Source: Octopus bimaculoides (lineage: Eukaryota). Taken from it: 55,432 nt of DNA. Shown piece after piece: positions 1,479 through 54,038 of the stretch. Every line of letters begins with the position of its first letter. The first letter of the stretch is position 1. Below the pieces are notes generated by a model, which had not been told where the DNA came from, searched no databases, and worked only from the letters and a program-made list of their open reading frames with translations. Where the stretch lies: the NCBI RefSeq assembly GCF_001194135.2, contig NC_068982.1:48525519-48580950 (forward strand), read 5' to 3'. Made by a program: the position numbers and the translations under genes.

Positions 1479-2520
1479 TGCTTAGAGTGGTGAAATACAT
1501 TTCTGTGTTATACTTAAGTTGTCTCTTTTGAGCCAGCTTTTGCAGACTGATCCTCAAAGACGGTCTGTTCATGTTGTCTTAGAGTCTTTTTTCTTTCTTT
1601 CATTTATCTATCCATTCTTTGTTGCCTACTGTGCCTGGAAATCACAGTTTTATTTTCTTTAGACTCGTGCTTAAAAGAACAAATATATCAGCACAGCCTG
1701 CTCTTGAAGACATTTTCATTTGAAGCTATATAAAAAGATGCAGTCCGAACTGCAATACACTGCACTTCAGCTGCAATATATCGCAGTATCTAGCTCCAAA
1801 TAGATATAAAAATAGAATAATTCATGGCACTATATAATAGTTTCCAGCTCAAAATTTGTACACCAATATACACAAAAATAAAGAAAAAATTGCTTAGAGT
1901 GGTGAAATACATTTCTCTCTTATACTTAAGTTGTCCCCTGGCTTTTGCAGGCTAATCCTCAAACAAGGTCTAGTCATGTTGTCTTAGAGTCTTATCTTTT
2001 TCTTTCTTTATCTATTTATTCTTTGTTGCCTAATGTGTCTGGAGATCACTGTTCTATTTTCTTTTGACTGGTGCTTGAAAGAACTGGCATATTAGTGCAG
2101 CCTACTCTTGAAGACATTTTCATTTAGGGCTACATAAGAGGTTGTTGCCTGAATTACAATATACTGCAGTATCTAGCACCAACAAGATTTAAAAAATGGT
2201 GTCATTCATGGCACTATATAACAGTTTTCAGTTCAAAATTTCTATGCCAATATACACAGACATCTCAGAAGTAAAAAGACATCTCATATAATACATTTAA
2301 TCTGTGTGGACACTACCTGGTGCTTCAAACTTGTTAATGTATTATGTAGAACACATGTCTACAAAAAACTAGATTAGGTATTTAAATGCATTGAATGACA
2401 TTTTTTTGTTTCCAGTAATAAATCGCTCAAAAGCAAATGTGTCTATTCATTTTTGAAACAGTAGTGTGTGTGTGCACCAGCATGACCACATTCCAATGAC
2501 TGTAACTGGTAAAAAGATAT
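1479..2520 (-). pseudogene. Two tandem diverged copies (period about 412 bp) of a Penelope-like GIY-YIG endonuclease remnant
   Basis: GCTTAGAGTGGTGAAATACATTTC recurs at about 1480 and about 1892. Minus-strand translation gives ..NENVFKSRL..SFKHESKENKTVISRH..KRDNLSITQKCI, resembling the PLE GIY-YIG C-terminal half; many stops. Confidence 0.55.
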
Positions 2521-3594
2521 ATTGTTTTTAAACAAGAATATTATTGACAGTGACTTTGAAGTTTTGGCCACTTAGGCAATCATTGGGCTGCAATGCATTG
2601 AAGTTTATGTTTGGCCTTATATAATCTCTGTTGAATTAAAATCTTCCTTGGGTATGTGGGTTTGAATGGAGTGGTAATTAGGTTTTAGAGTGGGTTGTGA
2701 TGGAGAGGTGCTTTGGAGAAACTTTTATTGATTGTATCTATCTATCTATCTATCTATTTATCTATCACAACAAAATAGTGAGATTGTTTGTATTAAAGAA
2801 TGTGAAAGAAGACAAAGTGATTTAAAAAGAAATAGATGTAGCATAGTTTATGATAACCTAATTATTATAGCAACTAATCTAACACTTGAGTGTGCATTTT
2901 GTGCATATGTATATCGAATCTCCATTTGCTGTTGAAATCTTGTTTGGTACACCTGTCTTTTGCTAACTACTAAAAAGTGTCCATCTAGTATGAAATATAA
3001 TTAAAATCAGTGATAATAACCAAATGTTGGCAACAGTCATAAGGTCTTTGAGGTGTTTAACAGTGCATTTCTTACAGAATTAATATTAAAACAAAAAGTA
3101 TGGAAAGGAAATGGAAATATGATGGATGACATGATGGATATTATTATAATTTCTTTACTAAATCAACTGATCTTGCCAAATGCTGGAAGCTGTGTCCTTT
3201 ATGAATGACTAATTCATCTTGTTGCTAATGAGAAGTAAATAAGAATCACATTAAAGTATTGTTGCTTTAAGGCATATTGATACCAACCAACGAAATCTTC
3301 ATTTCATAAATATTTAACTATCATTAGATACATTAGCTAAATAAGTGCTGTAAATAAGTCATAAATAAGTGTTAACTAAGTCAATTTATCAGTTATTTAA
3401 TTTTAAAATCTTTTACTTTTGGTTATTAATAATTCAAGAGTGCTTCTAAAGAGTAACTTAAACTGCTAGATTTAGCAGTTTCATCCCTTTCCACCTAAAT
3501 CAGATCCTACTATCTAAAATAGAGAAATATATTTTGTAAAAAGGATTTTGAAATGTAGAAAGTCTGATTAACTATGATGATATTTCTTTTCAAG

Positions 3595-3634
3595 CCTATA
3601 GATACAGATATTGCTACAAAACCACATGGTCTAG
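3595..3634 (+). CDS. Candidate coding micro-exon (PIDTDIATKPHGL), phase 0 to 1, unidentified gene
   Basis: TTTCTTTTCAAG|...CTAG|GTATCT; open frame; phase joins 8630 to make codon GAC. Confidence 0.5.
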
Positions 3635-3679
3635 GTATCTCAAGCAAATATCTCTACTATAGCTTTGAGCTGACTAATA

Positions 3680-3910
3680 CTTGTGAGTGAAGTTGGTAGA
3701 CAGAAACTATGTGGAAGCCTGCAGTGTGTGTGTTGTATGCATGTGTGTCTTTCTGAAATCTGTTTCTCTATTCACAGCATTTCAAAAAACTGGTCTTCTG
3801 TGCTTATTTCTCATAACTTGCAGTGTGACAGAAAGAGATTGTTAAATTAAGTATGGGGGTTTATTTGATCAACTACAGCCCTTCAAAACATTGCCCCAGT
3901 ATGACCACAT
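3680..3910 (+). mobile_element. Decayed SINE body (family B, same as 42620-43003)
   Basis: GTGAGTGAAGTTGGTAGACAGAAACT..GAAGCC..TAACTT..CCCCAGTATGACCACA matches other copies in the window. Confidence 0.6.
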
Positions 3911-4204
3911 TTATCTTTCTTTGAGCAGTGTTTGCTCATGCGTTTTTTTATGCACGTGAGATATTGCTCCATTCTATCCAACATCAGAGGTGTATCACTT
4001 TAGTCCCTAAAGATTGAAGGTCAACAATTGGAGGTAAAGTTTGCAGTCAGAATACAAAGAGCTAGAACAATAACACAATACACCTCAGCCAATGCTGTAA
4101 CATTTCTACCAATATCCACTGCTCTGACCTGTGGTAGCTGAGCCTTCTGTTCTACACTACTGATTTCATTACCCATGTTTCTGCGGAGTTATAAATCCAT
4201 CTTT

Positions 4205-4635
4205 AGAATGGTACTTGAAAGAACTAACATAACAGTACAACCTGCTGTTGAAGACATTTTCATTTAAGGCTACATAAGAGGATTCTGTCTGAACTACAAT
4301 GTATTGCAGTATCTGGCACCAACAAGATTCAGAAATGGTATCATTCACAGCACTATATAGCAGTTCCCAGCTCAAAATTTGCATACCAATATACACTGAC
4401 ATCTCAAAAGTAAATAGACACCTTTCATCATACCGTTTTATGTGTGTGGGCACTATCTGGTGCTTTGAACTTGTTAATATACTACAACAACATACATCTA
4501 CTAAAAACTAGATTAAATATTTAAATGCATTGAATGACATTATTTTGTTTCTAGAAATAAATCGTTCAAAAATGAATATGTTTATTCATTTTGAGATAGA
4601 AATGTGTGTACTCCAGCACAACCACAGTCCAATCA
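4205..4635 (-). pseudogene. Third copy of the Penelope-like GIY-YIG remnant
   Basis: Shares GAAGACATTTTCATTT..GGCACTATATA..TTTAAATGCATTGAATGACATT with 1479-2520; ORF 4169-4453 contains SSYVALNENVFNSRL..SSFK, like the PLE YIGLTE.FK.R...SSF motif. Confidence 0.55.
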
Positions 4636-5451
4636 CTGAAACCAGTAAAAGGATATGATGGGGCACAACTACAAATTCGTGTTGACCCACTCTTTCTTTA
4701 TATGTTCTTCTTTTTCACTTCTGAACTTACTACTCACCCACATTATTTCTAACAGGGCCTGTAATACTTTGGAAGGAGGTTAGTTGATTGAATTGACTGG
4801 TACTTTACTTTATAGACCACAGAGGAATGACAGGCAAAGTTGACTTTGGTGGAATTTAAACACAGAATGTAGAGAGCTACTACAAATACTGCAGTTCCCC
4901 TGTTAAATCTAATGATTCTACTCCTCCACCCATATGTTACAAATGTAACTTTCAGCGGAGCATTCTATGTAATCCTTGATTACATTAATTGTATTGCACT
5001 GACACAAATACACTAGAAGAAAATTATGTTTATATCTCACTATTTCTGATCATTGTTTTACCTGGATACACACACATACAAATGTTTACAGATAATACCA
5101 GGTTATATAATAAATGTATTTTCTAATATCTGTCTCTTTTTCTGATGAAAGCACCACATCGATGTGTTTTCTATTTTTATGAGTGTTGCCAGCCAGAAAC
5201 TTACAATCATTTTTAGGGTAGAATATAAAAAGGAGATATTCATGCAATTATTTTATTATATATGCTTTGGTTTATTTTTCATGTGCTATATAATTAGCAT
5301 TATATTCCAAATATATTAAAGCTTGAATCTGAGTCTGTTACACGAAAATTAATCAAGTATTTTAAATGAACCTTGCATGAAAATATTCTCTCAAGATTTA
5401 AGGAATAGTTTTTCTAGCAATATATCTATCTATCTATATATCTAACTAACT

Positions 5452-5454
<3 letters not shown>

Positions 5455-5504
<50 letters not shown>

Positions 5505-5520
5505 GAGAGGGAGAGAGATA
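5455..5520. repeat. (GA)n microsatellite
   Basis: Directly visible. Confidence 0.95.
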
Positions 5521-5763
5521 AATGTTTGAATAAGTGACATAAGAGAAAAGAAGAAGCATTCACACTTTTTCAAAGTAGATTTAAATATACATATTTGTAC
5601 ATAAAAATGTGAGTCAACCACATGCAATTTTGTTCCTGCCCTCTCCTATCTTTGTTTACCCCTCTTCCTCTGTTCCTTGGACTCTTCTATTTGCATCTGA
5701 TGATAGATGATACTCAAACTATTATACTTTCACTCAATAACTTTTTGCTTATGACTTTTCCTC

Positions 5764-6331
5764 CCTATGAGCCAGCTGGAGGAGATGTCCTCCTGGGGCT
5801 AAAAGCAACAGTAACATCCACCCCTAGGGGTCAGCCACACTTAAGTGGCAATATACTACACTTTATCGTGCAGTTACTGTTAATACTTCATTTAGAGAAT
5901 TAACATTGCTTGTTTTCACCTTTTCAATATCAGTGAAGAATTTCACTGGAAAAGAAGATATAAGGTTTGCCAGGTTTTTGTCTCTCTCACCAAGGTCATC
6001 AGCTGTCGAACGCCGACGAAGGGAAATAACCCTGAAATCCGGATACGTTCGTGCTGCTGGTCGAGGTGAGAGGGATAACTCCCTTGGCAAACAGGACACA
6101 GTCGTGTGTCGATAAGCCAGCTGGAGGAGATGTCCTCCTGGGGCTAAAAGCAACAGTAACATCCACCCCTAGGGNNNNNNNNNNCCTATGAGCCAGCTGG
6201 AGGAGATGTCCTCCTGGGGCTAAAAGCAACAGTAACATCCACCCCTAGGGGTCAGCCACACTTAAGTGGCAATATACTACACTTTATCGTGCAGTTACTG
6301 TTAATACTTCATTTAGAGAATTAACATTGCT
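5764..6331 (+). mobile_element. Retrozyme-like tandem element (345-nt monomer, A-B-A, gap, A) carrying a hammerhead ribozyme
   Basis: AGCCAGCTGGAGGAGATGTCC at 5770 and 6115 (offset 345) and again just after the 10-N gap; many hairpins; HHR at 6007-6051; no coding potential. Confidence 0.7.
6007..6051 (+). ncRNA. Type I hammerhead ribozyme (U4C core variant)
   Basis: CGAACG-CCGACGA-AGGG(AAATAA)CCCT-GAAAT(CCGG)ATA^CGTTCG: 6-bp stem I, 4-bp stem II, palindromic minimal stem III; predicted cleavage after 6045. Confidence 0.8.
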
Positions 6332-6362
<31 letters not shown>

Positions 6363-6899
6363 TATATGCATATATGCATACATATATGTACATACCTACA
6401 TCTATATGTATACATACATGCATTGTAATTACAATGCGCACTCCTCTATTATCTCTCTCCCTCTCTTGTTCTTCATCCTTACTGTTTTTCTCTCCCACTC
6501 TTTCCTTATTCTCTCCCTTTCACCGTTCCCACTCTCTCTCTCTCACTCCTCCTCTTCCTCTTTGACTCTCTCTCGTCGCTGACACGTGACGAAAGGGGTT
6601 CTTTCTTTTTGCCCACTGGTCTTCCTCAAGAACAGACGTGTTTTTTGTCTCTTCGTGACACTCCTACTTAGCGTTCATAATTTTTCTATCGTCTTGGCTC
6701 AACAGCCCTCACAGGTAAGAAACACAAAGTTCCCATAGACAACTACGATATTATAAATAAAGAATAGCTTAATAAAAAATGCAAACGCAATAATAAGAAT
6801 AATAGATCAACTAATACAAGGACAGATAATTCATTTAAAGATAAAAATTATAAACCTAATAATAGAAATAACAACGAAAAAACCTGGTTAATAATCCCA

Positions 6900-7560
6900 T
6901 ACGGGAACCAGGTTAAAACAACGCTATGATGTCTCGTATCTCACGTGTTTTAGTTCTAAACGTCAGTTTAACATTTGTGATCACATGGTAGGCGCCATTT
7001 TGTCACGTGATACGCATAGTATACATTTCTTTGCTTTGGATAGTACCTCAGTCAACCAAGTTTCCTCGTTAAGTTAAGTGACTTTTTTTTCCTTATATTC
7101 TTGCACGGTTTTTTCCCTTTACTAGCTAATCACACTTTCGTTATATACGTTTCCTTTTCTACAGATATTATCTCTCCAATTGACGTTTTATGCCTTAAAT
7201 TTGACAGATATTTATTGCTATTTGATGTGTTTTATTATAAAACCTTGACAATTTCCTTTGTACTAAATGCTGCTTAAACGGACAGATTTTTATACTTTTC
7301 TTATTTTAAGCATTTTAAAATTTAAGATACGGTTTTGAAGTTACCGGACCTGAAGAGTGTCCTCATATTGGGTGGTATCTATCTTGTTCGATTCACTGTA
7401 GATTGACCAGATATTTCCCACTGTTATGTGGCCATGAAACGCGCGTTGTCTTTCTCTCACTTTCGTCTCTTAAACGTAACCGATTTTAATTCTTAGTCCA
7501 ATATTTCAAAGATTTTTATATATTATAAATTCTCTCTTGCATTTTTTAGATTTTTAAACT
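6900..7560 (+). mobile_element. Probable Penelope-like pseudo-LTR / non-coding part
   Basis: CpG-richer non-coding block containing an HHR motif directly upstream of PLE RT remnants; boundaries approximate. Confidence 0.45.
7346..7451 (+). ncRNA. Type I hammerhead ribozyme with elongated stem II
   Basis: GGAC-CTGAAGA-[GTGTCCTCATA...TATGTGGCCAT]-GAAAC(GCGC)GTT^GTCT; predicted cleavage after 7447. Confidence 0.6.
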
Positions 7561-7670
7561 AGTTTTGTATAGTACACTTTTATTGATGGTGTCTGATCTC
7601 CTTCTTCGTGCGAGTTACACCATGGTGGTTCTTCTCTAAATTATTTAAAAAAATATATATATATTTCAAA

Positions 7671-8450
7671 ATGGATATCGTTACCAAGGCAGTATGCATG
7701 GTTCTAAAGAAGAACACATTTAACTTTGATGGTAAAACATAGCAAATGAAGGGCATAGCTATGGTGACAAAATTTACACCCTCATACATTTACCTGGTTA
7801 TGAGTTTTTTAGTAGAAAAATAGTAGAAGTAGAGAAAACGTTTGACCAAAATTTCAAGAACACATGTCATGGAAAAGTGGAAACACTTCCTCCTTGACTG
7901 TTTTAACTTTTGAGAGAAATCAAATGATGATCTGCAAATATTCAATAACATTCTAAACACCCTTCAACCATCTACCAAATTCCTGACAGAAATCAGTCAT
8001 AATGACTTACTGTTCCTAGATATTTACATGAAAATATGTGACTCCACTCTAACAATGGATATATTTTACAAAATAACAGACACACACCAGTATTTGAACT
8101 CCTACTCCTGCCATCCTTCACACATCAAAAGTAACACTCCATATAGTATAGTAAGATGTGTCTGTGCAACAGTAGTTGATCTGAAAATGCATCAAATTTA
8201 ACTCAATGAACTCAAAGTCTTCCTAAGGAAAAAACAGATTTACTCCTTAAAATTAATAAATGATAGAATTATAAAGGCAATGAAACTAGACATCATACAA
8301 CCGAGGACACTTTTGAAAAATATTGAAGAAAATGCTATTCTATTTATCAATAGACATAATTCAGGAGTGACCAACATTTTCCACACTATAGTGACAAACC
8401 TACCAATACTCTTACAAAACTCCAAAATAAAAAAACAATTCTAAAAATCC
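7671..8450 (+). pseudogene. Penelope-like reverse transcriptase remnant
   Basis: Translates as VLKKNTFNFDGKT*QMKGIAMVTKFTPSY (RT motif B region), then LNTLQPSTKFLTEISHNDLLFLDIY..DIFYKITDTHQYLNSYSCHPSHIKSNTPYSIVR, typical of the PLE RT and thumb; stops and frameshifts. Confidence 0.85.
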
Positions 8451-8629
8451 TGGGTCTCCTTAAAGCAACCACTGTTTACTCTTAAACGTACAAACAAACA
8501 CATGCACACACATACAGTATGTTTATGTTTATGTATGTGTGCTTTGTAAATGAATCACAAATATGATAATATCGAAATTCTGGTCTACATAATCTTGAAG
8601 CTTTTTCTTATAAATACATTTTAACAAAG

Positions 8630-8679
8630 ACATTGTGATCAGCTTCCGACATGACATGTCTCCAGATAAAACTGAGGAA
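8630..8679 (+). CDS. Candidate coding micro-exon ((D)IVISFRHDMSPDKTEE), phase 1 to 0
   Basis: TTTTAACAAAG|AC ATT GTG...GAG GAA|GTATGG; phases match the neighbouring candidates. Confidence 0.5.
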
Positions 8680-8994
8680 GTATGGTTACCACAAATATTT
8701 GGTCTGAGGCCAGCCTTAATCATCAGTAAATATTACTGCACGTCTTTTATCTATCAACTGACAAACAGCAAATTTCACTTAGGCAGGATGCCAGAGACAG
8801 ATGTTGGAAATAAGAAATTCCTTTTCTAATTTTCTACCTTATATAGTTCTGAAATGTTAGCTTTCTTCCTCATCAATATCATTTATTAGACGTAGTAACC
8901 TAAAATGAGGCAAATTTCGTTAGCACTTTCAGACAGAGATGTTTGGTCTGGAACAAATATTCCAGATATTTTACTAGTTTATCTTTGTTATTAT

Positions 8995-9335
8995 TTGTTT
9001 GAGTCATTGAACTGTAGCCAAGCTCAGACACCACCTTCAAGGGTTTAGCCAGACAAATTGAGCCTGATACTTTTTAAAGTCTGGTACTTACTCTATTAAT
9101 CTCTTTTGCTAAACTACTAAGTTATTGAGAGGTAAACAAGCCACACAAATATATACACANNNNNNNNNNTATATATGACAGGTTTCCACACCGTTTCTGT
9201 CCAACAAATTCAATTACAAGGTTTTCGTTGGCCTCGAGCTATAGTAAAAATCTTTTGCCCAAGGTATTGGGCACTAGGACTAAACCCCAAACCATTTTAG
9301 TTGCAAAATGAGCTTCTAAACCACACAACCATGCC
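8995..9335 (-). mobile_element. SINE family B, decayed, contains a 10-N gap
   Basis: TTTGAGTCATTGAACTG...AAACCACACAACCATGCCTG collinear with 42620-43003. Confidence 0.75.
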
Positions 9336-9533
9336 TGGACAAAAAGTGTTGTATTCTGTTTTTGCTTACACTCGTCACCAGTTTCTCCTTTTCCTGTAAT
9401 TGCTTTGTTCACCTATTTTAAACTACTATTCAACTACATCACCAATTTCAATCAGTGCAAATGAATCACAGAGTATTTATGTAATTGCTCAAGCTGGTAC
9501 CACATGGGCACATTGGATAATTGCCTGAGAGAC

Positions 9534-9950
9534 TCATGAGTCTAGGGGCCTAATTCTAATCTATGCTGTGGTTTGCTGTTAATAAGAATTACAGGGCTCA
9601 GTGCCCTGACCTGCCTGGCAACTTCATGGTCTAAGGGGCCAATTCTGATCTAAGTTACAGCTTGCTGTCAATAAATATTATAGGGCCTAATGCACTGACT
9701 GCCACAACTGTTGAAACTGACATGTCAGTATTAAGAATTTTTGATGGGCACTTTTTGGATGATTATGGTCCCTGTTAATTTTATATATGCACATTAGTGA
9801 ATTGCTAAATCCTCCAATTATTTGGATGATGAAAACACAAATCCTATTAACTGATGAGGCAACAGAAATTGTCAAAACTGACATGTCCAAATCAAGAATT
9901 CTTGATTGGCACTTTTTGGACAATTACGTTCCCTTTTAGTGTATATGCTT
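9534..9950 (+). repeat. Two adjacent diverged tandem duplications (about 90 bp and 161 bp periods)
   Basis: CATG..TCTA.GGGGCC.AATTCT twice; AAACTGACATGTC at 9714 and 9875, each followed by AAGAATT.TTGAT.GGCACTTTTTGGA. Confidence 0.75.
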
Positions 9951-10093
9951 TCATTCATGTGCATTAACTACAGCATTAGAGCAGTTTAGCTCTTATTTCT
10001 AGCAATGTAGGTGTTTCCTAACATCCTAGTTGCATTTAGTGACATTTGTAATTTTTCTTTTTTGGTGAAACATTAGAAACTATTGTTTATAGC

Positions 10094-10135
<42 letters not shown>

Positions 10136-10535
10136 NNNNNNNNNNNNNNNNNNNNNNNNNNNNNNNNNNNNNNNNNNNNNNNNNNNNNNNNNNNNNNNNN
10201 NNNNNNNNNNNNNNNNNNNNNNNNNNNNNNNNNNNNNNNNNNNNNNNNNNNNNNNNNNNNNNNNNNNNNNNNNNNNNNNNNNNNNNNNNNNNNNNNNNNN
10301 NNNNNNNNNNNNNNNNNNNNNNNNNNNNNNNNNNNNNNNNNNNNNNNNNNNNNNNNNNNNNNNNNNNNNNNNNNNNNNNNNNNNNNNNNNNNNNNNNNNN
10401 NNNNNNNNNNNNNNNNNNNNNNNNNNNNNNNNNNNNNNNNNNNNNNNNNNNNNNNNNNNNNNNNNNNNNNNNNNNNNNNNNNNNNNNNNNNNNNNNNNNN
10501 NNNNNNNNNNNNNNNNNNNNNNNNNNNNNNNNNNN
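10136..10535. other. Assembly gap (400 N) after an (AT)n tract
   Basis: N run. Confidence 0.99.
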
Positions 10536-10799
10536 TTTTTGACAAGGAAATAATAATTTTATCACCGCCAGAATCGTTTGTTTACGTAGTCAGCACTTAC
10601 TGTATTCGACTGAATGGACGTCAGTCATTGGTTGAAATTACAGAAATACGACAACTTTAACATGAAATAACTTGCGATGTACGTTTTTTTGTTAAGAAGA
10701 CTAAGAGAAAAAGATGTTTTATATGACACATTCTACCAGTGTCCCAAGTTTCAAAGTGTTTCGTTAAGAAAATACTGGTGCCCCCGTTTTGAACTAGAT

Positions 10800-10848
<49 letters not shown>

Positions 10849-12278
10849 CACATACATATATATACATATATGTATATATATGTGTATGATAGATAGATAG
10901 ATAGATAGATATGTATGTGTTTGTACATGTATATGTGTGTGTGTGTGCACGTGTGTGTGTTATTATTTCTTTGCATTGACATTGCATGATAGATGTAAAC
11001 AAGTGTCACTGTAATGTAAGTAGTGTCCTTCGTCTCCAATATTCTGTGAAATCATACTTGGCCATAGTAAAATATTGCCTTACTTGGAAATGGTGCCAAA
11101 ATGGGCATCTGGCTGTAGAAAACCTGCCTTAATAAATTCTGCGTGACTCAGCATGGAAAATTGAACAGTAAAATAATGACGATGATGATGGAAGTCATTT
11201 TCTTTCATTTTTTCTCAGTTTCTCCTCTTTATCATGCATATTTTTCCACTCTGGGACAGCCCATACAAATAATCCCTGTGTTTCTTTTGTGATTATTTTC
11301 TAATATTAAAACTAATCATTCAACCATGTTAATTTTTATGCATATGATTTTCAAAACTGAAGCCATGATTCTTTAGTTTGTTTTCACCCTTGGTAACTGT
11401 CATAGTTCAAGGAAGTCCATATCACAACAGAATTTCTTCAGCTAGTCCTAACTTTAACAGCCTATTAATCTGACAATCAGTCAATACTTTACCTTGTAAT
11501 TTCCAGGAAGTACTCTACATTTAAATGTCTTATCATGTGTATCTTGGATTGAAAATAATTGTCATAAGAAATGAATAAAAAGTTTGGTGACAGGAAGTGC
11601 ATCCAGCCATAAAGCATAGTTTGAGAGAAAAAACTGTCCAGCCCTTGTTAGCATGAAAAAGTGGATACAAAAGTTGATAGTGATTCTACAACAAAATAAC
11701 TTTTCTCTGTTTTAACTGAATAACCTGCATGTCTCTGTTATAACATACTACTCTCTCCCTCTCTCCCATTATCTATCTATCTATCTATCAATATTTCTAT
11801 CTACCTATCTATCTATTTCTTTTATGCATGCTCACATAGGTACCATTTATTCTTCAATGAATATTTCAGTTTAGCTATCCATCACACATTTTTTTTAATA
11901 TCTAAACCATAAGACCTGTTCCTTTGTTAAATATAGTTATACTGATTAAACTTTAGTTTATCCAAGCTCATCTACAATTTCCATTTCAGAGTCCACCAAA
12001 TGTCCTTCCATATTCCATTCAATTACACTTCTGTCAGTATGATTTATTTATTACCAAACTTTATCTCCTCTCCAATGTTAAGTACAACCTATTCTGCTTC
12101 ACTTTTAATGAAACAGTATTTCTTTTTCTTACTTATCTCGCTTTCCCATGTAGTTCTTTTTCATATAAATACTTATATGCTTGTGTGTGTGAGTGTGTGT
12201 ATGGATATGTGTGTGTATATGTGTGTGTGTATGCATATATAGGTGTGTGTGTGTGTATAGGTGTGTATGCATATATAG

Positions 12279-14909: not shown

Positions 14910-15284
14910 ATACAGAATGCTTCAGTGGCTCAAAAAAAAAAAAAGTGTGCAAGCATGGCATAGTGAACGTTAAAGCGATGATGATGATGAATGATAACGA
15001 TGATGATGATGATAAATAACTTGAGATTGGCTGGTGCTCTGGAAGTAATCGGTAAACATTGTTATCTAGTATGTGTTAGAAATGTAAATCAATTTCTGTT
15101 ATTAAACCTGTTTCTGTTAAGTCTTAAATTGTTATATGATTATTTAATATCAATCACTTTATATTGAAAAACCTTAGTAATTAATTTTTGTTCATACAAG
15201 AGGTGTGGTGGCTATTAGAGGTAATAATAAACAATTAACTAATCTGAATATGTATAAAAATTAATTTGCTGCTGGCAAAGGTGT

Positions 15285-15430
15285 TGATGAGGAGGATGGT
15301 GGTGTTGATGATGATGATAATATTGGTAGTGATGATGATGGTGGTGGTAATGAGGATAATGGTGATGATGATGATGATGATAACAACAATGATGGTGGTG
15401 GTGGTGATGATAATGATAAAGATGATGATC
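15285..15430. repeat. (GAT/GGT/AAT)n compound trinucleotide repeat
   Basis: Directly visible; explains ORFs 15235-15450 and 15266-15472. Confidence 0.9.
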
Positions 15431-15600
15431 TTGGCTTTCACATTACTCAAAATCAGTGAAGCTAATATTTAAGCCATGAGAACTGATTTTGCATGCATGT
15501 ACAAATAACATGTATAACTGATTGTCTGAAAGTATATAAGATTGAACAAAGCTATGCCTGAAAGTATGCATATATATATTTTATATGTATATTAAAACAG

Positions 15601-15971
15601 TGGAGGCACAATGGCCCAGTGGTTAGGGCAGTGGACTCGTGGTCATAGGATCGTGGTTTCGATTCCCAGACCAGGCATTGTGAGTGTTTATTGAGCGAAG
15701 ACACTTAAAAGCTCCACGAGGCTCCGGCAGGGGATGGTGGCAAACCCTGCTGTACTCTTTCACCACAACTTTCTCTCAATTTTACTTCCTGTTTCTGTTG
15801 TGCCTTTAATTCAAAGGGTCAGCCTTGTCATGCTGAATATCTCCGAGAACTACGTTAAGGGTACACATGTCTGTGGAGTGCTCAGCCACTTGCATGTTAA
15901 TTTCATGAGCAGGCTGTTCCGTTGATCAGATCAACTGGAACCCTCGACGTCGTAAGTGATGGAGTGCCAAC
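15601..15971 (+). mobile_element. Full-length tRNA-derived SINE
   Basis: A box TGGCCCAGTGG, B box GGTTTCGATTCCC; 12-bp TSD ATATTAAAACAG (15589-15600 and 15972-15983); second copy at 27450. Confidence 0.92.
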
Positions 15972-16379
15972 ATATTAAAACAGATTGCACCTTGCATGCA
16001 TATACAAATACAATGTATAATATATTGCCTAGAAGCAAACAAGGATGAATAAAACTGCATGAAAGAATGTATTTACATGAAATTCTGCATCAAGTGGCTT
16101 ATAAGGAATATATCTCCTTTCCTCTGAAAAGTTGTCCCAGAAAAAAAACAGGTTATGTTTTATAAACAAAAGTCAGAGTGTAGGTCTTTTTGTTTTTTTG
16201 CTTGGGTGGAAGGGCAGAATCAATGACCCTTCTCAGATTTCCTGAGACAAGTAGGAAGAATGGAGAAAGAGTGAAAGGGAGGAAGGTATCCTCAAACTGG
16301 AGATGTGGTCCAAAAGCTTATGTATAGCATCACCATCAACAGCAGCATCACTTAATGTCCACCAAACAGAAATATAAAA

Positions 16380-16567
16380 TCAATCAATCAAACATGTATG
16401 TATGAACAACAGGTTTCTAGTTCTATATTTAAGAGATGAGGAACTACGTATATTATTTACATTATTTACATTCGACGGATATTTGTCCTCATCTTGTTTG
16501 TTGTTAACACAACATTCCCTCCAGCCTTCTTCAGGTGTCTTGGGGAAATTTCGAACCTGGGTTCTCA
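16380..16567 (-). mobile_element. Penelope-associated repeat fragment with a hammerhead remnant
   Basis: Minus strand GACAC-CTGAAGA-AGGCTGGAGGG-AAT-GTT-GTGTT keeps stem I and the first core strand; the PLE link is inferred. Confidence 0.35.
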
Positions 16568-16732
16568 TTCTCTGAGTGGTTGGCGTTAGGAAGGGCAGCC
16601 AGCTGTAGAAACTCTGCCAAATTAGATTGGAGCCTGGTGTTGCCATCCGGTTTCACCAGTCCTCAGTCAAATCATCCAACCCATGCTAGCATGGAAAGCG
16701 GACGTTAAACGATGATGATGATGATGATGATT
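16568..16732 (+). mobile_element. RTE-type 3' tail ending in (GAT)n
   Basis: GGCGTTAGGAAGGGCAGCCAGCTGTAGAAAC...GGACGTTAAACGATGATGATG. Confidence 0.85.
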
Positions 16733-17079
16733 ATTGAGAATACACCTGTAGAAAAAAAAAAAGGTAATGTAAAAGGAGAAAGGGCTCTATACCCCTTTCT
16801 TATTTTTTCTGACCAGGCTCCCGTAGCTTTATGGGTTTTTCCATGTGTAACCTTTCCTTTTTCGAAGTGCCTCCCCCTTTGGGAGTTCTATTTATTTATT
16901 TATTTATCTATTTATTTGTTATATCTTTCTCCGTTTTCTTCCTCTGTTTAGACGAACTTTCCTACCTTTTGGGACAAAACCTTTTGTAACCTTCGTCCTG
17001 TCTTTGTCCTTACATGTTTTTAATTGATATTAGCCCTTGTGGCCAATAAAACGAATTAATTATTATCATTATTGTTATT

Positions 17080-17147
17080 GTTCAGGTTGCTGCTTGGAAT
17101 CTTGGGGTTAGTAGCCCGTGCTCTTAACCACTATACCATATGCCCAC
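17080..17147 (-). mobile_element. tRNA-like SINE head
   Basis: Minus strand GGGCATATGGTATAGTGGTTAAGAGCACGGGCTACTAACCCC: A box plus anticodon arm. Confidence 0.55.
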
Positions 17148-18023
17148 GGGCATATAGTGTAGTGGTTTCTATATTTTTTTCCCCCTAATTTCATCTGCAA
17201 GTATTGGTCAACTCACAGCTACAGTATACGACAGCAGCCAACAATGTTCATGAAGTGGGATTGAACCCCTGACTGAATGTTTCTGAAGTGAACTTCTTAA
17301 CCACACACCCATGCCTATAGTCATTATGAATGTTTATATGTTTATATATTTCTAAAGGTACACAAGTGTAGTTAAAAAATATATTTATCTGACACAAACT
17401 CATCTCTTTTTCTCTGTTCAGTTTCTTATTTTCACTCTTCTTTTCTCCCATTTCTCTCTCTCTCTCTCTGTTTTATTCATACACATACATGCAAACACAC
17501 ACACAATTTATGACTGACTTTATCATTCTTTCACATTTTATTCCCATCTGATTCTCTCTTTGTATGCACACATTTTCCATTTCGTATGTCTGTACATGTC
17601 ACTCTCTTTCTATCTATTTGCCTGTCAATTTCTCTCGCTCTTTCTCTTCCTCTCTCTCTCTAATATTCTCTGCCATCCTTCAATTCTCTCTCCTCCTCTC
17701 ACTTTCTAGACTCTCATGTTTATGTTGAAATGTGTGCTAATTATTTATGCATGTCTTTTTTGATATATGTGCATGTACACTTATGTAAGCATGTATTAGT
17801 ATTCAAGACAGAACAGCATTTAGAAGATGATTTCAACAGTTTAAAGCTCTATCATCTAATCTCATTAGTTAATGCAGTCAAGTACAACATTGTAGCAGCT
17901 AAGCTGTGTAAAATTTCAGTATAACATTCAACACTTATATCAGATAACATGAAACACCTACCTACCTGTTCACACTGGCCTGCAGTTACTAACTCATCTG
18001 ATCTTCGCTTTGTTTCTCCACAG

Positions 18024-18058
18024 TTCTTTTCACCTCTCCAGCCATACATACCCAGCCT
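18024..18058 (+). CDS. Candidate coding micro-exon (FFSPLQPYIPS(L)), phase 0 to 2
   Basis: Strong acceptor CTTTGTTTCTCCACAG|, donor CCT|GTAAGA; phase matches 24957. Confidence 0.55.
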
Positions 18059-18694
18059 GTAAGAGATTATTTATAAAAGTAGATTATAATGTAATTCTCA
18101 TAATAGTAGATAGATTACTATATTTACTCAATGAATTTTACTTACAATGTATATCAAATATTTGTGACATGTACATATATATAATGAAAAGCTTCACTCA
18201 AAAAAAAAATTTTCTTTGCAATAATAAAATAATGATAATAATGATAATTCTTTCTAGTTTTAGGCAAAAAGGAAGAAGAAAATCATTAGGTCAACCCAAG
18301 TGCCCAGCTGGTACTTATTTTATAGACCTTGAAAGAATGGAAACAAAGTTGACTTCAGTGGAATTTGAACACAAAAATAAAGATGGACAAGAAAAAAAAT
18401 GCTCGTCAGTTGAACATGTCCCTTAGTGGCTGCAGATGGTTCTGAAACCACTTAGCATATAGTCATAGTCAGTTGGACAGCTTGCAGCAGACCCCTTGAT
18501 CGGTATGCAGCATGGAGAAGTTACAACAATGATGAAACATCAATAAACTATTTGACTAGTATCTTATTTTATCAATCTCAGAATAATTTCAGCAGGATTT
18601 GGATTGAGAATGTAAAAAAACCTTAACAAATACATGTCATTTTCTCTGAAACATTAATGATTCTGCCAGTCCAATGTGAAAATAATAATTATCC

Positions 18695-18907
18695 TTTCTA
18701 CTTTAGGCAAAAGGCCTGAAATTTGGTGAGAGTGGGTTAGTTAATTACATTGATCTCAGTACTCAGATTAGCACCTATTTTATCAACCCTGAAAAGATGA
18801 AAGCTAAAGTCGCCCTCAGCAGAATTTGAACTCAGAACATAAAGATGAATGAAATATCATTAAGCATTTTGCCCAGTGTGTAACGAATCTGCCAGCTTGC
18901 CGCCTTT
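18695..18907 (-). mobile_element. SINE family D (head AAGGCGGCAAGCTGGCAG)
   Basis: Conserved block TTTATCAACCCTGAAA.GATGAAAG..AAAGTC..CCTC.GC.GAATTTGAACTCAGAAC, present in more than 10 copies in the window. Confidence 0.8.
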
Positions 18908-19233
18908 ATAATAATATTAATAATAACTGTTTCTAATTTAGGCACAAAGCCAGCAATTTTTGAGTCAGAACCATGGTGAAGAGAGAATGAGATAGACAAA
19001 TAGACAGAGAAAGATAGATAGATAGAGAGAGAGAGAGAGAAAATGAGGAGAAAAATAATTGCTTTTTTCTTATATAATATAGTAAGACAAGAAAAGGCAG
19101 TGCTTACAAAGATTTGACATGACTTCTATAAATCTTACAAGAAACAAAGAATTTATGTCAGGTTATTCTCAGACTGGAGACCTGGATCAGAAGCCTGCAG
19201 CTAAAAGCACCTAAAAGCTATTTGGTGGTTTAA

Positions 19234-19451
19234 ATCCTTTTGTTATCATAGCTCTGTTGAAATATACAGCATTTGTTTATATTAATTTCTTTGAATAATT
19301 AAGGGTTTAATGAAAAAATGACTTATTATCAAGCAGGTGTTCAGAAACTAAATTAACATGAAATTTTGATTGAAGATTAAATTTAGAGATCTTTAAGACT
19401 GGGGTCTGTGTCATAAATACAAAGGCAATAGGTTGGTTGGTATCAAAAGGG
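19234..19451. mobile_element. piggyBac-like MITE
   Basis: TTAA|ATCCTTTTG...CAAAAGGG|TTAA. Confidence 0.55.
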
Positions 19452-20442
19452 TTAAGTGATCTATCTAACAACAGTCACGGTCCCTCTGACAGACTTCTAC
19501 AGAATTTCGTGGTAACCACTTGCACCAACAAGATTGAGTGCAACTCATGAGTGCAGCAAAACTCACTTGCCTAAGGTTTCATACAGTGGGACTCATTCCT
19601 GGAAGTATAAAATTCTGATGTGAACTTTATAATCATAAAACCATGGTGAAGAGAGAATGTGATAGACCGATAGTTAGATAGAGAGAAAGAAAGAAGCAGA
19701 CAGTCAGACAGACAGATAGATACAGACTGAGAAAGCGAAAACAAAATCAAATAAGTTAAGGAAAAATTTTGAATAGGCAAATAGCTAGAAATGAAATGAA
19801 GAACATTTCTCTCTATCACTTTTTATTACAATTTGTGCCCAACCTTCCCTTTACCAAGAAAAAGACTAAAAATAAAACTAAACAAATACATAAAGCTGCA
19901 ATGAATGAGACTGTAAAATATAAAGTGCACTAAAAAGATAAATGTCGGGCAATGTATTCATACTGGTGCCAAAGAAAGAGTTTAACAAAACAATAAAGAA
20001 ATCAATACTACATTTCTTAGATTCGAAGACAAATATTAAAAAAAAAAAAAATTCAAGTAGTTTCAGTTTTGTACTGAACAGAGCTTGTGTTTTAAGGAAG
20101 GAAGGCAGTTCTTCACATGCAAATTGGGATATGATTTCAACAGTACAAGAGTGAGAAATAAAAAGAGAATAAGTAAATATTGTAAGAATGTATGAGTGTG
20201 TGACTATATATATATATATATATATAGTGTATACACACACATATACACTTAGTGTGCTCTGATGTGCTTGATAAATGAATGAGGAAGAGTACTCAATTTA
20301 TGTTGTAGAGTATATGATTTATTTAGACTCAATTCCTTTATGGCAATTTAACTTTCACACTACCACTAATACATGCATACATACACACATGCATGCACAT
20401 GCACACATCTATATATATATTCCTATATACATACATATATGC

Positions 20443-35720: not shown

Positions 35721-35889
35721 CTAGTGCTGGGATGCAGCAGATAATAGTCGCTGGTAGCAATGGTACCAAAGATAGTTTGTAATAGTATTTATGTTGTGGA
35801 AGTAATGGTATTGATTTAGGTAGAGGTAAATATAAAAAAAAATCATTATAGTCATAATTATTATTATCATCATTATTATTATTATTATT

Positions 35890-36103
35890 ATGAGGTAGTG
35901 CGCTGGCAGAATCATTAGCATGCTGGACAAAAGGCTAAGCAGCATTTTGTCTGTCTTTATGTCCTGTGTTCAAATTCTGACAAAGTTGACTTTACCTTTC
36001 GTCCGTTCAGGATTGATAAAATTAAGCATCAGTGAAACATTGAGTCGATGTAATCAACTAGTCCCCTTCCTTGTAGAAAGGATTATTATTATAGTAGAAA
36101 GGA

Positions 36104-36168
<65 letters not shown>

Positions 36169-36600
36169 GAGGTGGTGAGCTGACAGAATCATTAGCACAC
36201 CGGGCAAAATGGGTATCGACATTTTGCCTGTCCTTACATTCTGTGTTCAAATTCTGACAAAGTCAACTTTGCCTTTCGTTATTTCAGGGTTGATAAAATA
36301 AGTACCAGTTGAGTATTGGGGTCGATGTGATCGACTTATGCCTTTCCCCAAGATTGCTGGCTTTGTGCCAAAATTTGAAACCCTTATTATGAGGCAGTGA
36401 ACTGGCAGACACATTAGTGCGCTGGATATATTGCTTAGCAGCATTTTCTCTACTTTTTATGTTCTGAGTTCAAATCACTGAGATTGACATTGCATTTCCT
36501 CCTTTTGAGGCTGATAAAATAATTACCATTTGAACACTGGGGTCAATTTAATTGAGTAGCCCTTTACTCAAAATTGCAGGCCTCATGCCAATGATAGAAA
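35890..36600 (+). mobile_element. Three tandem SINE family D copies separated by (TTA)n
   Basis: GAGG.GG.GAGCTGGCAGA..CATTAGCA heads at about 35892, 36170 and 36390. Confidence 0.8.
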
Positions 36601-45954: not shown

Positions 45955-46432
45955 TTGGGCAAGTGTCTTCTACTATAGTCTCAGGCTGACCAAAACTTTG
46001 TAAAGGGATTTGATAGAAGGAAACTGAAAGAGGCTTGTTGTATACATACATAAATACATACAAACAGACAGACAGATTGAGAGAAAAAGAGATAGACATA
46101 GAGATAGAGATATCTTTTTATTATAACCACACAGGGCTAAATACAGAGATAGAGATAGATAGACAGACAGATAGATAAATAGATAGAGATAAAAAGATAG
46201 ATGTATATANNNNNNNNNNNNNNNNNNNNNNNNNNNNNTATGCATGAATAAAATCTCTGTATGTGTGTGTTTGTCCCACACACACACATCACTGCTTGAC
46301 AAACAGAGTTGGTTTGCTTACATCCCCATAACTTTAAGACAAAATAAATATTGGGGTCAAATTATTCCACTAAAATGCTGCAAGGTGATTCCCCAGCATA
46401 GCCACAGTCCAATGACTGTAACAAGTAAAAGA
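45955..46432 (+). mobile_element. SINE family B lacking its head, with a microsatellite expansion and a gap
   Basis: TTGGGCAAGTGTCTTCTACTATAG...CCAGCATAGCCACAGTCCAATGACTG. Confidence 0.8.
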
Positions 46433-53828: not shown

Positions 53829-54038
53829 GCTGACAAATTTTTCTGCTTTGTAAGGATTTTATCCTATACATGCTATTCTATCAGTATTTATGCATTGAAA
53901 AATATATCTTTCTACTTGTACTACAAGACATGTCAGTGCTTCAAAAACAAACTTAAGTTGCTTACATATGATGTAATTTATATTACATCTAGCGTTTGAT
54001 TTTATGAGTTCTAAAATTGCAGAAGAATTTGTCAGTAA

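What the first reader, a model, noticed from the sequence alone, without database searches (positions are those of the whole stretch)
5764..6331. Candidate retrozyme: a 345-nt self-complementary monomer with a hammerhead, inserted as more than one unit
Segment A (from 5770) recurs 345 nt later, giving A-B-A, the geometry expected from reverse transcription of a circular RNA. The monomer is densely paired. The HHR sits at the tip of a long rod (GTTTGCCA 5965/TGGCAAAC 6085; CTCTCACC 5984/GGTGAGAG 6065; GGTCATCAGC/GCTGCTGGTC). Further hairpins are CAGTGAA/TTCACTG, GACACA-GTCG-TGTGTC, AACAGTAAC/GTTACTGTT, GGAGG/CCTCC and GCCAC/GTGGC. Size, type I HHR and lack of coding match metazoan non-LTR retrozymes, which make circular RNAs and are thought to be mobilised by PLEs; PLE remnants lie within about 1.5 kb. 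Only one HHR is visible and the 10-N gap may hide more units. Whether this family is already described in cephalopods I cannot tell.
Basis: partly seen in the sequence, partly recalled or inferred. Interest (0 to 1): 0.9.

Follow-up and report, generated by a model that had tools for sequence, protein, structure and literature searches.

The report
Octopus hammerhead retrozyme copy, variant core
This is one copy of a very abundant 345-base non-coding repeat of an octopus genome that carries a hammerhead self-cleaving RNA motif, as the "retrozyme" mobile elements of other animals do, but this copy has a weakened ribozyme core and its local layout is blurred by an assembly gap.

Summary
The sequence observation mostly holds. 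5770-6114 is a 345-nt unit (A 142 nt, B 203 nt), its first 60 nt recur at 6115-6174, and it folds far better than shuffles (z -7.55). The gap is not a continuous join. The sequence after it (6185-6332) is an exact copy of 5764-5911, including 6 nt of the left flank, so the number of units at this locus is unknown.

A type I hammerhead (HHR) layout sits at 6007-6051 (+), with predicted cleavage at 6045/6046. It has C instead of U at core position 4, and no Rfam model detects it. It is still not chance: it is the only such motif in the window, against 0.05 expected.

Raw DNA reads cover thousands of family copies. The sites in 6009-6049 varying at or above about 1.5% are the ones an HHR tolerates. 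These are N7, H17 (A/C, no G), helix III pair U-A to C-G at equal frequency, helix I A to G opposite U, and position 4. About 7% of copies carry the canonical U.

Both unit junctions are common in DNA and RNA. Other copies abut (TA)n, are 5'-truncated, or sit head-to-head, as Penelope-like element (PLE) insertions do, and a PLE reverse-transcriptase remnant lies 1.4 kb away.

Verdict: a new, cephalopod member of the metazoan non-LTR retrozymes. Self-cleavage and circular RNA are untested.

The parts
5770..5911 (+). Segment A, copy 1 (142 nt). It starts at the recurrent 5' end of the family (5770) and ends at the recurrent 3' end (5911).
   Evidence: Read and contig depth rises from 0 at 5770. 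Other copies end at about 5910 next to (AT)n (loose ends). Exact repeats are shown.
5912..6114 (+). Segment B (203 nt). It holds the long rod and the hammerhead.
5965..6092 (+). Long imperfect rod, which is the outward extension of hammerhead helix I. It carries a side hairpin GGGA-UAAC-UCCC at 6073-6084.
   Evidence: The minimum-energy and centroid folds both contain it.
6007..6051 (+). Type I hammerhead motif. Helix I is 6007-6012 with 6046-6051. The core is C6013 C6014 G A C6017 G A6019. Helix II is A-GGG 6020-6023, loop AAAUAA, CCC-U 6030-6033. G12 A13 A14 are 6034-6036. Helix III is A6037 U6038 [CCGG] A6043 U6044. H17 is A6045. Predicted cleavage lies between 6045 and 6046.
   Evidence: Descriptor hit with one core mismatch, U4 to C. 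Chance test. Family variation. Dimer fold. There is no Rfam match.
6115..6174 (+). Segment A, copy 2. Only the first 60 nt are present, cut off by the gap.
   Evidence: 100% identical to 5770-5829. Family reads continue as A beyond base 60 (joints 6114 to 5770 and 6114 to 6191).
6175..6184 (.). Assembly gap (10 N). The sequence is not continuous across it.
6185..6190 (+). CCTATG, a duplicate of the left flank 5764-5769. It marks the post-gap contig as a second rendering of 'left flank + A'.
   Evidence: 148-nt exact repeat 5764-5911 = 6185-6332.
6191..6332 (+). Segment A, copy 3 (full 142 nt), running directly into the (TA)n-rich microsatellite.
6333..6419 (.). TA-rich microsatellite at the 3' end of the insertion. 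It is the likely target site.
   Evidence: TRF row 6332-6419. Other family copies also abut (AT)n. PLEs prefer (TA)n and other microsatellites (PMC8557442).
7700..8450 (+). Context only: a decayed Penelope-like reverse-transcriptase remnant with stops and frameshifts. It is not part of the repeat unit.
   Evidence: Frame translation. The read-through finds proteins with RVT_1 (PF00078) + PF26215, and one with GIY-YIG (PF01541), E down to 8e-65.

Best explanation
The locus is a copy of a young, very abundant non-autonomous retroelement of the metazoan non-LTR retrozyme kind. The element is a PLE-dependent, non-coding, 345-nt tandem unit, in an Octopus bimaculoides-type genome.

Proposed life cycle:
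1. Tandem arrays are transcribed into multimeric + strand RNA. RNA of the family was seen here. Which strand drives this is inferred from G-U pairs.
2. Each unit carries a type I hammerhead at the tip of a long helix I rod. Helix III has only 2 bp and is closed by a palindromic tetraloop (AUCCGGAU). Two hammerheads are therefore predicted to pair through an 8-bp shared helix III and cut as a double hammerhead between A6045 and C6046. The structure is predicted here. Cleavage is not shown.
3. Unit-length RNAs are ligated to circles by a host tRNA ligase. This step is inferred from other animals (PMC7229834).
4. A PLE reverse transcriptase/GIY-YIG nuclease copies the RNA into microsatellites. 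The resulting insertions start at 5770, end at 5911 next to (TA)n, are often 5'-truncated, and form partial tandems (A-B-A) or head-to-head pairs. The pattern of ends was seen here. The enzyme is inferred.

The copy in the window has a single hammerhead with C at core position 4, as about 93% of the family has. It is therefore probably an inert product rather than a source of circles.
For: Motif:
- It is the only near-consensus HHR in 110 kb of scanned strand, with 0.05 expected, and 0 hits in 3000 monomer-like random sequences.

Family variation in raw DNA reads at about 12,000-14,000x (contig data). The sites within 6009-6049 that vary at or above about 1.5% are:
- 6017 (N7), C>A, 20-21%.
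- 6045 (H17), A>C, 25-27%. G and U are below 1%.
- 6038 T>C and 6043 A>G, at matching frequencies of 7.1/7.2% and 8.4/8.5%. This converts helix III pair U-A to C-G.
- 6014 C>T, 6.5/7.9%, which restores the canonical U4.
- 6009 A>G, 17%, and 6010 A>G, 3%, both opposite U, so a G-U pair is kept on the + strand only.
- 6009 A>T, 1.5-1.8%. This matches the 1.5-2% subfamily that reads GAAA-CUCGAG-UA-CGUACG, with a palindromic loop again and A-U changed to U-A.
Two changes sit near 1%: 6017 C>T (about 1%), at the free N7 position, and 6036 A>C (0.6-1.1%, strand-biased, probably error). The other core positions, C3, G5, A6, G8, A9, G12, A13, A15.1 and U16.1, show no change at 1%.
Other CpG cytosines (6011, 6050) change in under 0.5% of reads, so 6014 C>T is not general CpG decay.

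Folding:
- Two copies co-fold into the double hammerhead as the minimum-energy structure. Energies are -53.3 vs 2 x -24.2 kcal/mol for the window sequence, and -57.3 vs 2 x -22.0 for the U4/C-G variant.
- Unit fold z is -7.55.

Tandem units and abundance:
- A to B and B to A junction contigs and reads are common in DNA and RNA. Upstream of 5770 the consensus of other copies is the end of B.
- Raw-read depth is about 14,400 on the HHR and about 28,000 on the A start, in 1.93 Gb of reads.

PLE-type ends:
- (AT)n or other microsatellite flanks, variable 5' truncation points, and inverted head-to-head joints at 5770, compared with PMC8557442.
- A PLE RT remnant lies nearby.

Other properties:
- Size of 345 nt, 45% GC, no coding potential, no tRNA/5S/7SL similarity.
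- Published properties of metazoan retrozymes match: PMC7229834, PMC7761336.
- U4C is a known natural variant that still works in vivo: PMC3088659.
Against: - No Rfam hammerhead model matches, even at E<=10 on a 77-nt stretch.
- Core position 4 is C in this copy and in about 93% of copies. U4C is reported to lower activity considerably in vitro (PMC3088659).
- The 10.1-11.1 pair is A-U rather than the usual G-C.
- As a monomer the region prefers an inactive fold, CCG 6013-6015 with CGG 6040-6042: -24.2 against -13.9 kcal/mol for the HHR fold.
- RNA-seq shows no pile-up of molecule ends at 6045/6046 and continuous coverage across it. Both read orientations are equally represented. The level is modest, a few hundred reads among about 12-13 million reads scanned per run. 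That fits read-through transcription as well.
- Linkage of the co-varying sites is inferred from equal frequencies, not seen on single reads.
- The region is so uniform that loops are invariant too. Lack of change at core positions by itself says little.
- Circular RNA, self-cleavage and PLE dependence were not tested.
Confidence: 0.68

Rival explanations
1. The family is a non-autonomous PLE derivative, or a satellite-like tandem repeat, in which the hammerhead is a relic. It was inherited from a PLE pseudo-LTR and disabled by U4 to C in the lineage that amplified. Copies spread as linear RNA through the PLE partial-tandem mechanism or by unequal crossing-over, with no self-cleavage and no circular stage.
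For: - About 93% of copies have C4.
- Rfam is silent.
- Insertion ends at 5770 and 5911 do not coincide with the predicted cleavage site.
- No read ends pile up at 6045/6046.
- PLE families without HHRs amplify very well (PMC8557442).
Against: - Subfamily differences respect hammerhead rules, including compensatory helix III changes that keep the palindrome in three different versions. That is not expected of a dead motif.
- U4C is documented as compatible with function in vivo (PMC3088659).
- The double-hammerhead fold is the predicted optimum for two units.
Confidence: 0.2
2. This concerns the local layout only. The A-B-A seen in the window is partly an assembly artefact. The real locus, or one of its two haplotypes, is 'left flank - A - (TA)n'. 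On that reading, segment B with the hammerhead was walked into from the high-copy repeat, or it belongs to the other haplotype.
For: - The post-gap contig starts with 6 nt of the left flank followed by a full A and the right flank. 148 nt are identical to 5764-5911.
- The pre-gap contig stops 60 nt into the second A, as a k-mer walk that re-enters a cycle would. This step is my inference.
- B in the window equals the commonest family variant at nearly every site.
- PLE-type insertions are known to upset short-read assemblies (PMC8557442).
Against: - Partial tandems A-B-A are the normal product of this kind of element.
- A to B and B to A junctions are common genome-wide.
- No locus-specific read could be laid on the flank, so neither layout was seen directly.
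Confidence: 0.35
3. It is an ordinary pol III SINE (tRNA-, 5S- or 7SL-derived head, LINE-derived tail) that happens to lie in tandem.
For: - Octopus genomes are annotated with about 11.6% SINEs, mostly 'unclassified' (PMC13282606).
- The family is short, non-coding and highly repeated.
Against: - No tRNA, 5S, 7SL or snRNA similarity at E<=10, and ARAGORN finds nothing.
- Units are joined head to tail without tails between them.
- Inverted head-to-head copies and microsatellite targets point to PLE-type rather than LINE-type integration (PMC8557442).
Confidence: 0.04

Closest known systems
Metazoan non-LTR retrozymes (Cervera & de la Pena 2020, PMC7229834): coral, mussel and axolotl tandem repeats of about 170-400 bp with type I hammerheads, expressed as circular RNAs
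   Same: - Unit of 345 nt, 45% GC, non-coding, strongly self-paired.
- One type I HHR per unit.
- Short tandem or partial-tandem arrays dispersed in the genome, in tens of thousands of copies.
- RNA is present.
- The helix III of 2 bp capped by a tetraloop matches the axolotl HHR_Amex2 description. The palindromic loop and predicted dimeric action match the amphibian HHRs.
   Different: - Core position 4 is C in most copies. The canonical U occurs in about 7%.
- The 10.1-11.1 pair is A-U.
- Rfam models do not detect it.
- Circular RNA and self-cleavage are not shown.
- The host is a cephalopod, and no paper in the searched library describes a retrozyme there.
Hammerheads in pseudo-LTRs of Penelope-like elements and their non-autonomous derivatives (PMC8557442; PMC7761336; bioRxiv 10.64898/2026.07.22.740005)
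   Same: - Partial tandem (pseudo-LTR-like A...A), 5' truncation, inverted adjacent copies, and (TA)n or other microsatellite targets.
- The HHR is expected to act as a dimer.
- A PLE RT remnant lies 1.4 kb away.
   Different: - There is no sequence similarity between the unit and the PLE remnant in the window.
- PLE HHRs are described as minimal variants lacking helix III nucleotides (PMC7761336). This one has a 2-bp helix III and a long helix I rod.
Natural U4C hammerhead variant of a viroid (cited in Perreault et al. 2011, PMC3088659)
   Same: It has the same single departure from the core consensus. It is reported to be much less active in vitro yet sufficient in vivo.
   Different: That case is a minority variant of an infectious plant RNA. 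Here C4 is the majority state of a genomic repeat family, and its activity is unknown.
Newt satellite 2 / Schistosoma and cave-cricket satellite hammerheads (type I HHRs in 'satellite DNA')
   Same: [quoted passage not shown] A weak helix III leads to dimeric cleavage (PMC7229834, PMC7761336).
   Different: The resemblance is architectural only.

Membership tests
Hammerhead ribozyme, type I | Three helices around the junction in the order I - CUGANGA - II - GAAA - III - H, with the 5' and 3' ends leaving through helix I | tested here: met
   Helix I has 6 bp and continues as a rod. Helix II has 4 bp with a 6-nt loop. Helix III has 2 bp with a CCGG loop. H17 is A.
Hammerhead ribozyme, type I | Conserved core nucleotides C3 U4 G5 A6 G8 A9 G12 A13 A14 A15.1 U16.1, and H17 not G | tested here: inconclusive
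   10 of 11 are present, but position 4 is C in this copy. T at 6014 is found in 6.5-7.9% of genomic reads and 9-12% of RNA reads. U4C is a documented natural variant with reduced activity (PMC3088659).
Hammerhead ribozyme, type I | Match to the curated covariance models (Rfam Hammerhead_1 and relatives) | tested here: not met
   No hit at gathering score, nor at E<=10 on 801 nt or on 77 nt.
Hammerhead ribozyme, type I | Helices supported by compensatory change among copies, with free positions N7 and H17 variable | tested here: met
   6038 T>C and 6043 A>G occur at equal frequency. 6009 and 6010 A>G lie opposite U. 6009 A>T matches the CGUACG subfamily. N7 is C/A and H17 is A/C. Linkage is inferred from frequencies, not from single reads.
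Hammerhead ribozyme, type I | Site-specific self-cleavage | not testable with these tools
   RNA-seq shows no excess of ends at 6045/6046. These libraries are not suited to decide the question.
Metazoan non-LTR retrozyme | Head-to-tail repeats of about 150-450 bp, each with a type I HHR, non-coding, GC below 50% | tested here: met
   The unit is 345 nt with 45% GC, and the longest stop-free stretch is 101 aa. Both junctions are common in DNA. At this locus only 1.17 units are contiguous, because of the gap.
Metazoan non-LTR retrozyme | Highly self-paired unit RNA | tested here: met
   z is -7.55 on the + strand and -5.75 on the - strand.
Metazoan non-LTR retrozyme | [quoted passage not shown] | tested here: inconclusive
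   Family RNA is present in many runs, including junction-spanning reads and contigs. Tandem DNA gives the same joints. Both orientations are equal and the level is modest. Circularity is not testable.
Non-autonomous PLE-mobilised element | Partial tandems or pseudo-LTRs, 5' truncation, adjacent inverted copies, microsatellite targets | tested here: met
   A-B-A here. Other copies have (AT)n, (CA)n or (GA)n flanks, variable 5' ends, and head-to-head joints at 5770, compared with PMC8557442.
Non-autonomous PLE-mobilised element | Sequence shared with an autonomous PLE of the same genome (3' end or pLTR) | tested here: not met
   There is no similarity to anything else in the window, including the PLE remnant. 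The rest of the genome could not be searched.
SINE (pol III) | Head derived from tRNA, 5S or 7SL RNA with an internal promoter | tested here: not met
   No Rfam match at E<=10 and no ARAGORN hit.

The most novel reading that the evidence does not exclude
The prevailing ribozyme of an octopus repeat family with some 15,000-40,000 copies may be a natural C4 hammerhead that is functional only as a double hammerhead. In that reading C4 stabilises an inactive CCG:CGG fold in monomers and circles, so it acts as a built-in attenuator. A canonical U4 / C-G helix III lineage of about 7% would be the fast-cleaving form. If so, part of what octopus annotations call 'unclassified SINEs' would really be PLE-driven circular-RNA elements. 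They are also substrates of the heavy A-to-I editing of cephalopods.
Probability: 0.3. Interest if true: 0.62.

Novelty: new member of a known kind. Interest (0 to 1): 0.5.

Why it matters
Retrozymes are known from cnidarians, mussels, amphibians and other animals. No paper in the searched library describes one in cephalopods. Recent octopus repeat annotations report 11.6% SINEs, mostly unclassified, and do not mention hammerheads or retrozymes.

A ribozyme-bearing, PLE-type element with tens of thousands of copies would reclassify a visible slice of the octopus repeat landscape.

The family would also give a natural series of hammerhead cores for testing how much activity such elements need. 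The series is C4 versus U4, three helix III versions that all keep a palindromic loop, and H17 A/C.

The transcripts appear to be edited on both strands. That ties the family to the cephalopod A-to-I editing question.

Tried and rejected
- Rfam searches at three scales found no ribozyme, tRNA, 5S or 7SL similarity. ARAGORN found nothing. This rejects a classical SINE, and it means the HHR claim had to be tested by hand.
- I first read the region as a plain stem/internal-loop hairpin. I dropped that reading once the junction order I-core-II-GAAA-III-H became clear.
- The minus strand has no HHR-like motif. Helix I changes would also break pairs there.
- Two read-laying runs were lost to a filter on 6360-6396.
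- The unique flank gives depth 0 in every run, although the runs are said to hold it. A locus-specific test of the gap and a depth calibration on the flank were therefore impossible.
- I tried to fetch other copies through ORF translations of the repeat. The exact-protein look-ups found nothing. The homology search gave a single 54-aa Octopus bimaculoides 'protein', which is a translation of the repeat.
- Pattern scans for the HHR core in metagenome and viral contigs found nothing.
- Pfam on short ORFs around the locus found nothing. The PLE remnant was recognised only after a read-through search.
- General CpG decay as the source of 6014 C>T was rejected. Other CpG sites in the motif change in under 0.5% of reads.
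Full report
**1. What is in the sequence**

The window reads flank ...CCTATG | A (5770-5911, 142 nt) | B (5912-6114, 203 nt) | first 60 nt of A (6115-6174) | 10 N (6175-6184) | CCTATG + full A (6185-6332) | TA-rich microsatellite.
- The unit has 45% GC, against 34% for the window, and no open frame beyond about 100 codons.
- As RNA the + strand folds at -128.7 kcal/mol against -90.3 +/- 5.1 for dinucleotide shuffles, z -7.55. The - strand gives z -5.75.
- No other copy lies in the 55-kb window.

**2. The gap, tested first**

The two sides are not continuous.
- The left side stops 60 nt into a second A.
- The right side restarts with six bases of the left flank (CCTATG = 5764-5769) and then a complete A. 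148 nt are duplicated exactly.
- A contig that reads 'left flank - A - right flank' cannot follow 'left flank - A - B - A...' on one molecule unless there was an odd duplication.
- The simpler readings are two haplotypes (with and without B-A) placed in series, or a repeat walk by the assembler.

I could not settle this. No read or contig could be laid on the unique flank in any run, although the index says the runs hold it. So the number of units at this locus, and even whether B sits at this locus on every haplotype, stays open. Family reads do run from the end of B into A well past base 60.

**3. Is there a hammerhead?**

Rfam says no. There is no ribozyme match at gathering score, none at E<=10 on 5600-6400, and none at E<=10 on the 77 nt around the site.

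Read by hand, the + strand has the full type I layout:
- Helix I: CGAACG 6007-6012 with CGUUCG 6046-6051, continued outward by the long rod 5965-6092.
- Core: C6013 C6014 G A C G A6019.
- Helix II: A-GGG / AAAUAA / CCC-U, 6020-6033.
- G12 A13 A14: 6034-6036.
- Helix III: A6037 U [CCGG] A U6044.
- H17: A6045, with the cut predicted between 6045 and 6046.

The only departure in the eleven conserved core bases is C for U at position 4. The 10.1-11.1 pair is A-U.

I wrote a descriptor for this layout: at most one core mismatch, helix I at least 5 bp, helix II at least 3 bp. It finds this site and nothing else on either strand of the window. Random sequences with the window's dinucleotide make-up give 0.05 hits per window. 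3000 sequences with the unit's make-up give none. The motif is not chance.

**4. What the family says**

The unit is a high-copy repeat.
- About 1,600 to 11,000 Logan contigs per low-coverage DNA run lie on it.
- In raw DNA reads, 1.93 Gb of run X46 give about 14,400-fold depth on the hammerhead and about 28,000-fold on the start of A.
- If the genome is about 2.7-2.8 Gb (the size given for octopus assemblies in PMC13282606), that is roughly 15,000-20,000 hammerhead units and up to 40,000 A segments. The estimate is rough because the library is a proximity-ligation type.
- A 54-aa UniProt entry of Octopus bimaculoides is a translation of the minus strand of another copy. That ties the family to that species or a close relative. 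A second, coded species carries near-identical RNA contigs.

Variation in the raw DNA reads across 6009-6049 (contig data):

| Site | HHR position | Change | Frequency, DNA (X46 / X47) |
|---|---|---|---|
| 6017 | N7 | C>A | 20-21% |
| 6045 | H17 | A>C | 25-27%; G and U below 1% |
| 6038 | helix III pair | T>C | 7.1% / 8.4% |
| 6043 | helix III pair | A>G | 7.2% / 8.5% |
| 6014 | position 4 | C>T (restores U4) | 6.5% / 7.9% |
| 6009 | helix I, opposite U | A>G | 17% |
| 6010 | helix I, opposite U | A>G | 3% |
| 6009 | helix I | A>T | 1.5% / 1.8% |

- These are the sites that vary at or above about 1.5%. Two further changes sit near the 1% line: 6017 C>T (about 1%, also at N7) and 6036 A>C at A14 (0.6-1.1%, with strand bias that suggests sequencing error).
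- The equal frequencies of 6038C and 6043G fit one double change, U-A to C-G, in the second pair of helix III.
- The 6014 C>T frequency tracks the same values across four data sets.
- 6009 A>T matches in frequency a 1.5-2% subfamily that reads GAAA-CUCGAG-UA-CGUACG. That subfamily has another 2-bp helix III with a palindromic loop, and a helix I pair changed from A-U to U-A.
- The other core positions (C3, G5, A6, G8, A9, G12, A13, A15.1, U16.1) show no change at 1%.
- Other CpG cytosines in the motif change in under 0.5% of reads, so 6014 C>T is not blanket CpG decay.

Caveats:
- The family is so uniform that the loops are invariant too, so the silence of the core alone proves little.
- I infer linkage from frequencies and did not see it on single reads.
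- Even so, the substitutions that separate subfamilies fall on the two free core positions, on a compensating pair, and on wobble-compatible helix I sites that keep pairs only on the + strand. A working hammerhead would produce exactly that pattern.

**5. How it probably works**

- Helix III is too weak for a monomer. Alone, the region prefers an inactive fold in which CCG 6013-6015 pairs with CGG 6040-6042 (-24.2 against -13.9 kcal/mol).
- Two copies co-fold into a double hammerhead with an 8-bp shared helix III (AUCCGGAU) as the minimum-energy structure. Energies are -53.3 against 2 x -24.2 kcal/mol, and -57.3 against 2 x -22.0 for the U4/C-G variant.
- This is the behaviour published for newt, axolotl and PLE hammerheads (PMC7229834; PMC7761336).
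- U4C is on record as a natural variant that is much weaker in vitro yet sufficient in vivo (PMC3088659).
- By analogy with other animals, multimeric + strand transcripts would cut themselves into 345-nt units, which a tRNA ligase closes into circles. These steps are inference. None was tested here.

**6. How it moves**

- Other copies end at the end of A next to (AT)n.
- They start at 5770 next to (CA)n/(GA)n or unique DNA, or are cut off at many points in B.
- In several cases they are joined head to head to an inverted, 5'-truncated copy exactly at 5770.
- Upstream of 5770 the commonest neighbour is the end of B.
- These are the traits listed for Penelope-like elements and their non-autonomous partners: 5' truncation, partial tandems forming pseudo-LTRs, adjacent inverted copies, microsatellite targets including (TA)n, and trouble in short-read assemblies (PMC8557442).
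- A decayed PLE reverse transcriptase lies at about 7700-8450 on the same strand. Its read-through finds RVT_1/PF26215 proteins, and one with a GIY-YIG nuclease. It shares no sequence with the unit.
- The insertion ends (5770, 5911) are not the ribozyme cut site. So copies were not made from simple linear monomers. That fits copying of circles or multimers, but it does not prove it.
- A 2026 preprint argues that animal retrozymes are non-autonomous PLE sequences (10.64898/2026.07.22.740005).

**7. RNA evidence**

- Family RNA is present in many runs of the species, including contigs and reads that cross both unit junctions.
- In the two raw-read libraries both orientations are equal, and coverage is continuous across 6045/6046. 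No position shows a pile-up of ends. The level is a few hundred reads among about 12-13 million reads scanned per run.
- This neither shows nor excludes cleavage and circles, because such libraries are poor at both.
- Subfamilies are not sampled evenly. H17=C and U4 are somewhat commoner in RNA than in DNA, and N7=A is rarer.
- Several T>C and A>G differences are seen only in RNA. They look like A-to-I editing of both strands.

**8. Comparison and verdict**

- In size, composition, self-pairing, tandem layout, ribozyme type and PLE link, the family matches the metazoan non-LTR retrozymes.
- It differs in the C4 majority core, the A-U closing pair of helix II, and invisibility to Rfam.
- No paper in the searched library mentions retrozymes or characterised hammerheads in octopus or other cephalopods. 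The nearest is a count of 235 Rfam Hammerhead_1 hits in the giant squid genome.
- I rate it a new member of a known kind, of moderate interest.
- The copy in the window is probably an inert product, with a single C4 hammerhead and an uncertain layout.

Noticed in passing
window 5826-5885 (A>G) and 6004, 6027, 6033, 6044, 6048, 6055 (T>C): These differences appear in 3-30% of RNA reads but are absent, or below 0.3%, in raw DNA reads of the same species. The pattern looks like A-to-I editing of transcripts of both strands of the repeat.
   Followed up: partly
window 5770 joined to 5791-5808 on the opposite strand (other genomic copies): Head-to-head junctions are present in WGS contigs of three runs and in raw reads. 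An inverted 5'-truncated copy abuts a direct copy exactly at 5770, as described for PLE insertions.
   Followed up: partly
window 5530-5769: The unique left flank gets depth 0 from every run laid on it. The run index says the same runs hold 100% of its sampled words. This is unexplained, and it blocked a locus-specific test of the gap.
   Followed up: partly
window 7700-8450 (+): A decayed Penelope-like reverse-transcriptase remnant with several stops. Its read-through matches RVT_1/PF26215 proteins and one GIY-YIG protein. The best hit has 46% identity and E 8e-65.
   Followed up: partly
window 53670-54202: A 282-bp unit repeated 1.9 times. Each copy holds a tRNA-like gene, at 53757-53828 and 54039-54110 (Rfam tRNA 41.6 and 45.4 bits). 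It may be a tRNA-derived SINE pair or a tRNA gene duplication.
   Followed up: no
window 35857-36353: A 277-bp unit repeated 1.8 times at 79% identity, next to an (ATT)n run. It looks like another short interspersed repeat in partial tandem.
   Followed up: no
window 5863-6238 (-): UniProt A0A0L8IHK6_OCTBM is a 54-aa 'uncharacterized protein' of Octopus bimaculoides. It is a translation of the minus strand of a copy of this repeat and so is probably a spurious gene model.
   Followed up: yes
window 5455-5518 and 6449-6575: A (GA)n run lies upstream and a CT-rich stretch lies downstream of the insertion. They form a 48-nt, 77% complementary inverted pair about 1 kb apart. This may be mere microsatellite context.
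   Followed up: no
window 9160-9169, 10136-10535, 40805-41648, 46210-46238: Four further assembly gaps are in the window. Long ORFs listed across them are runs of X and mean nothing.
   Followed up: no
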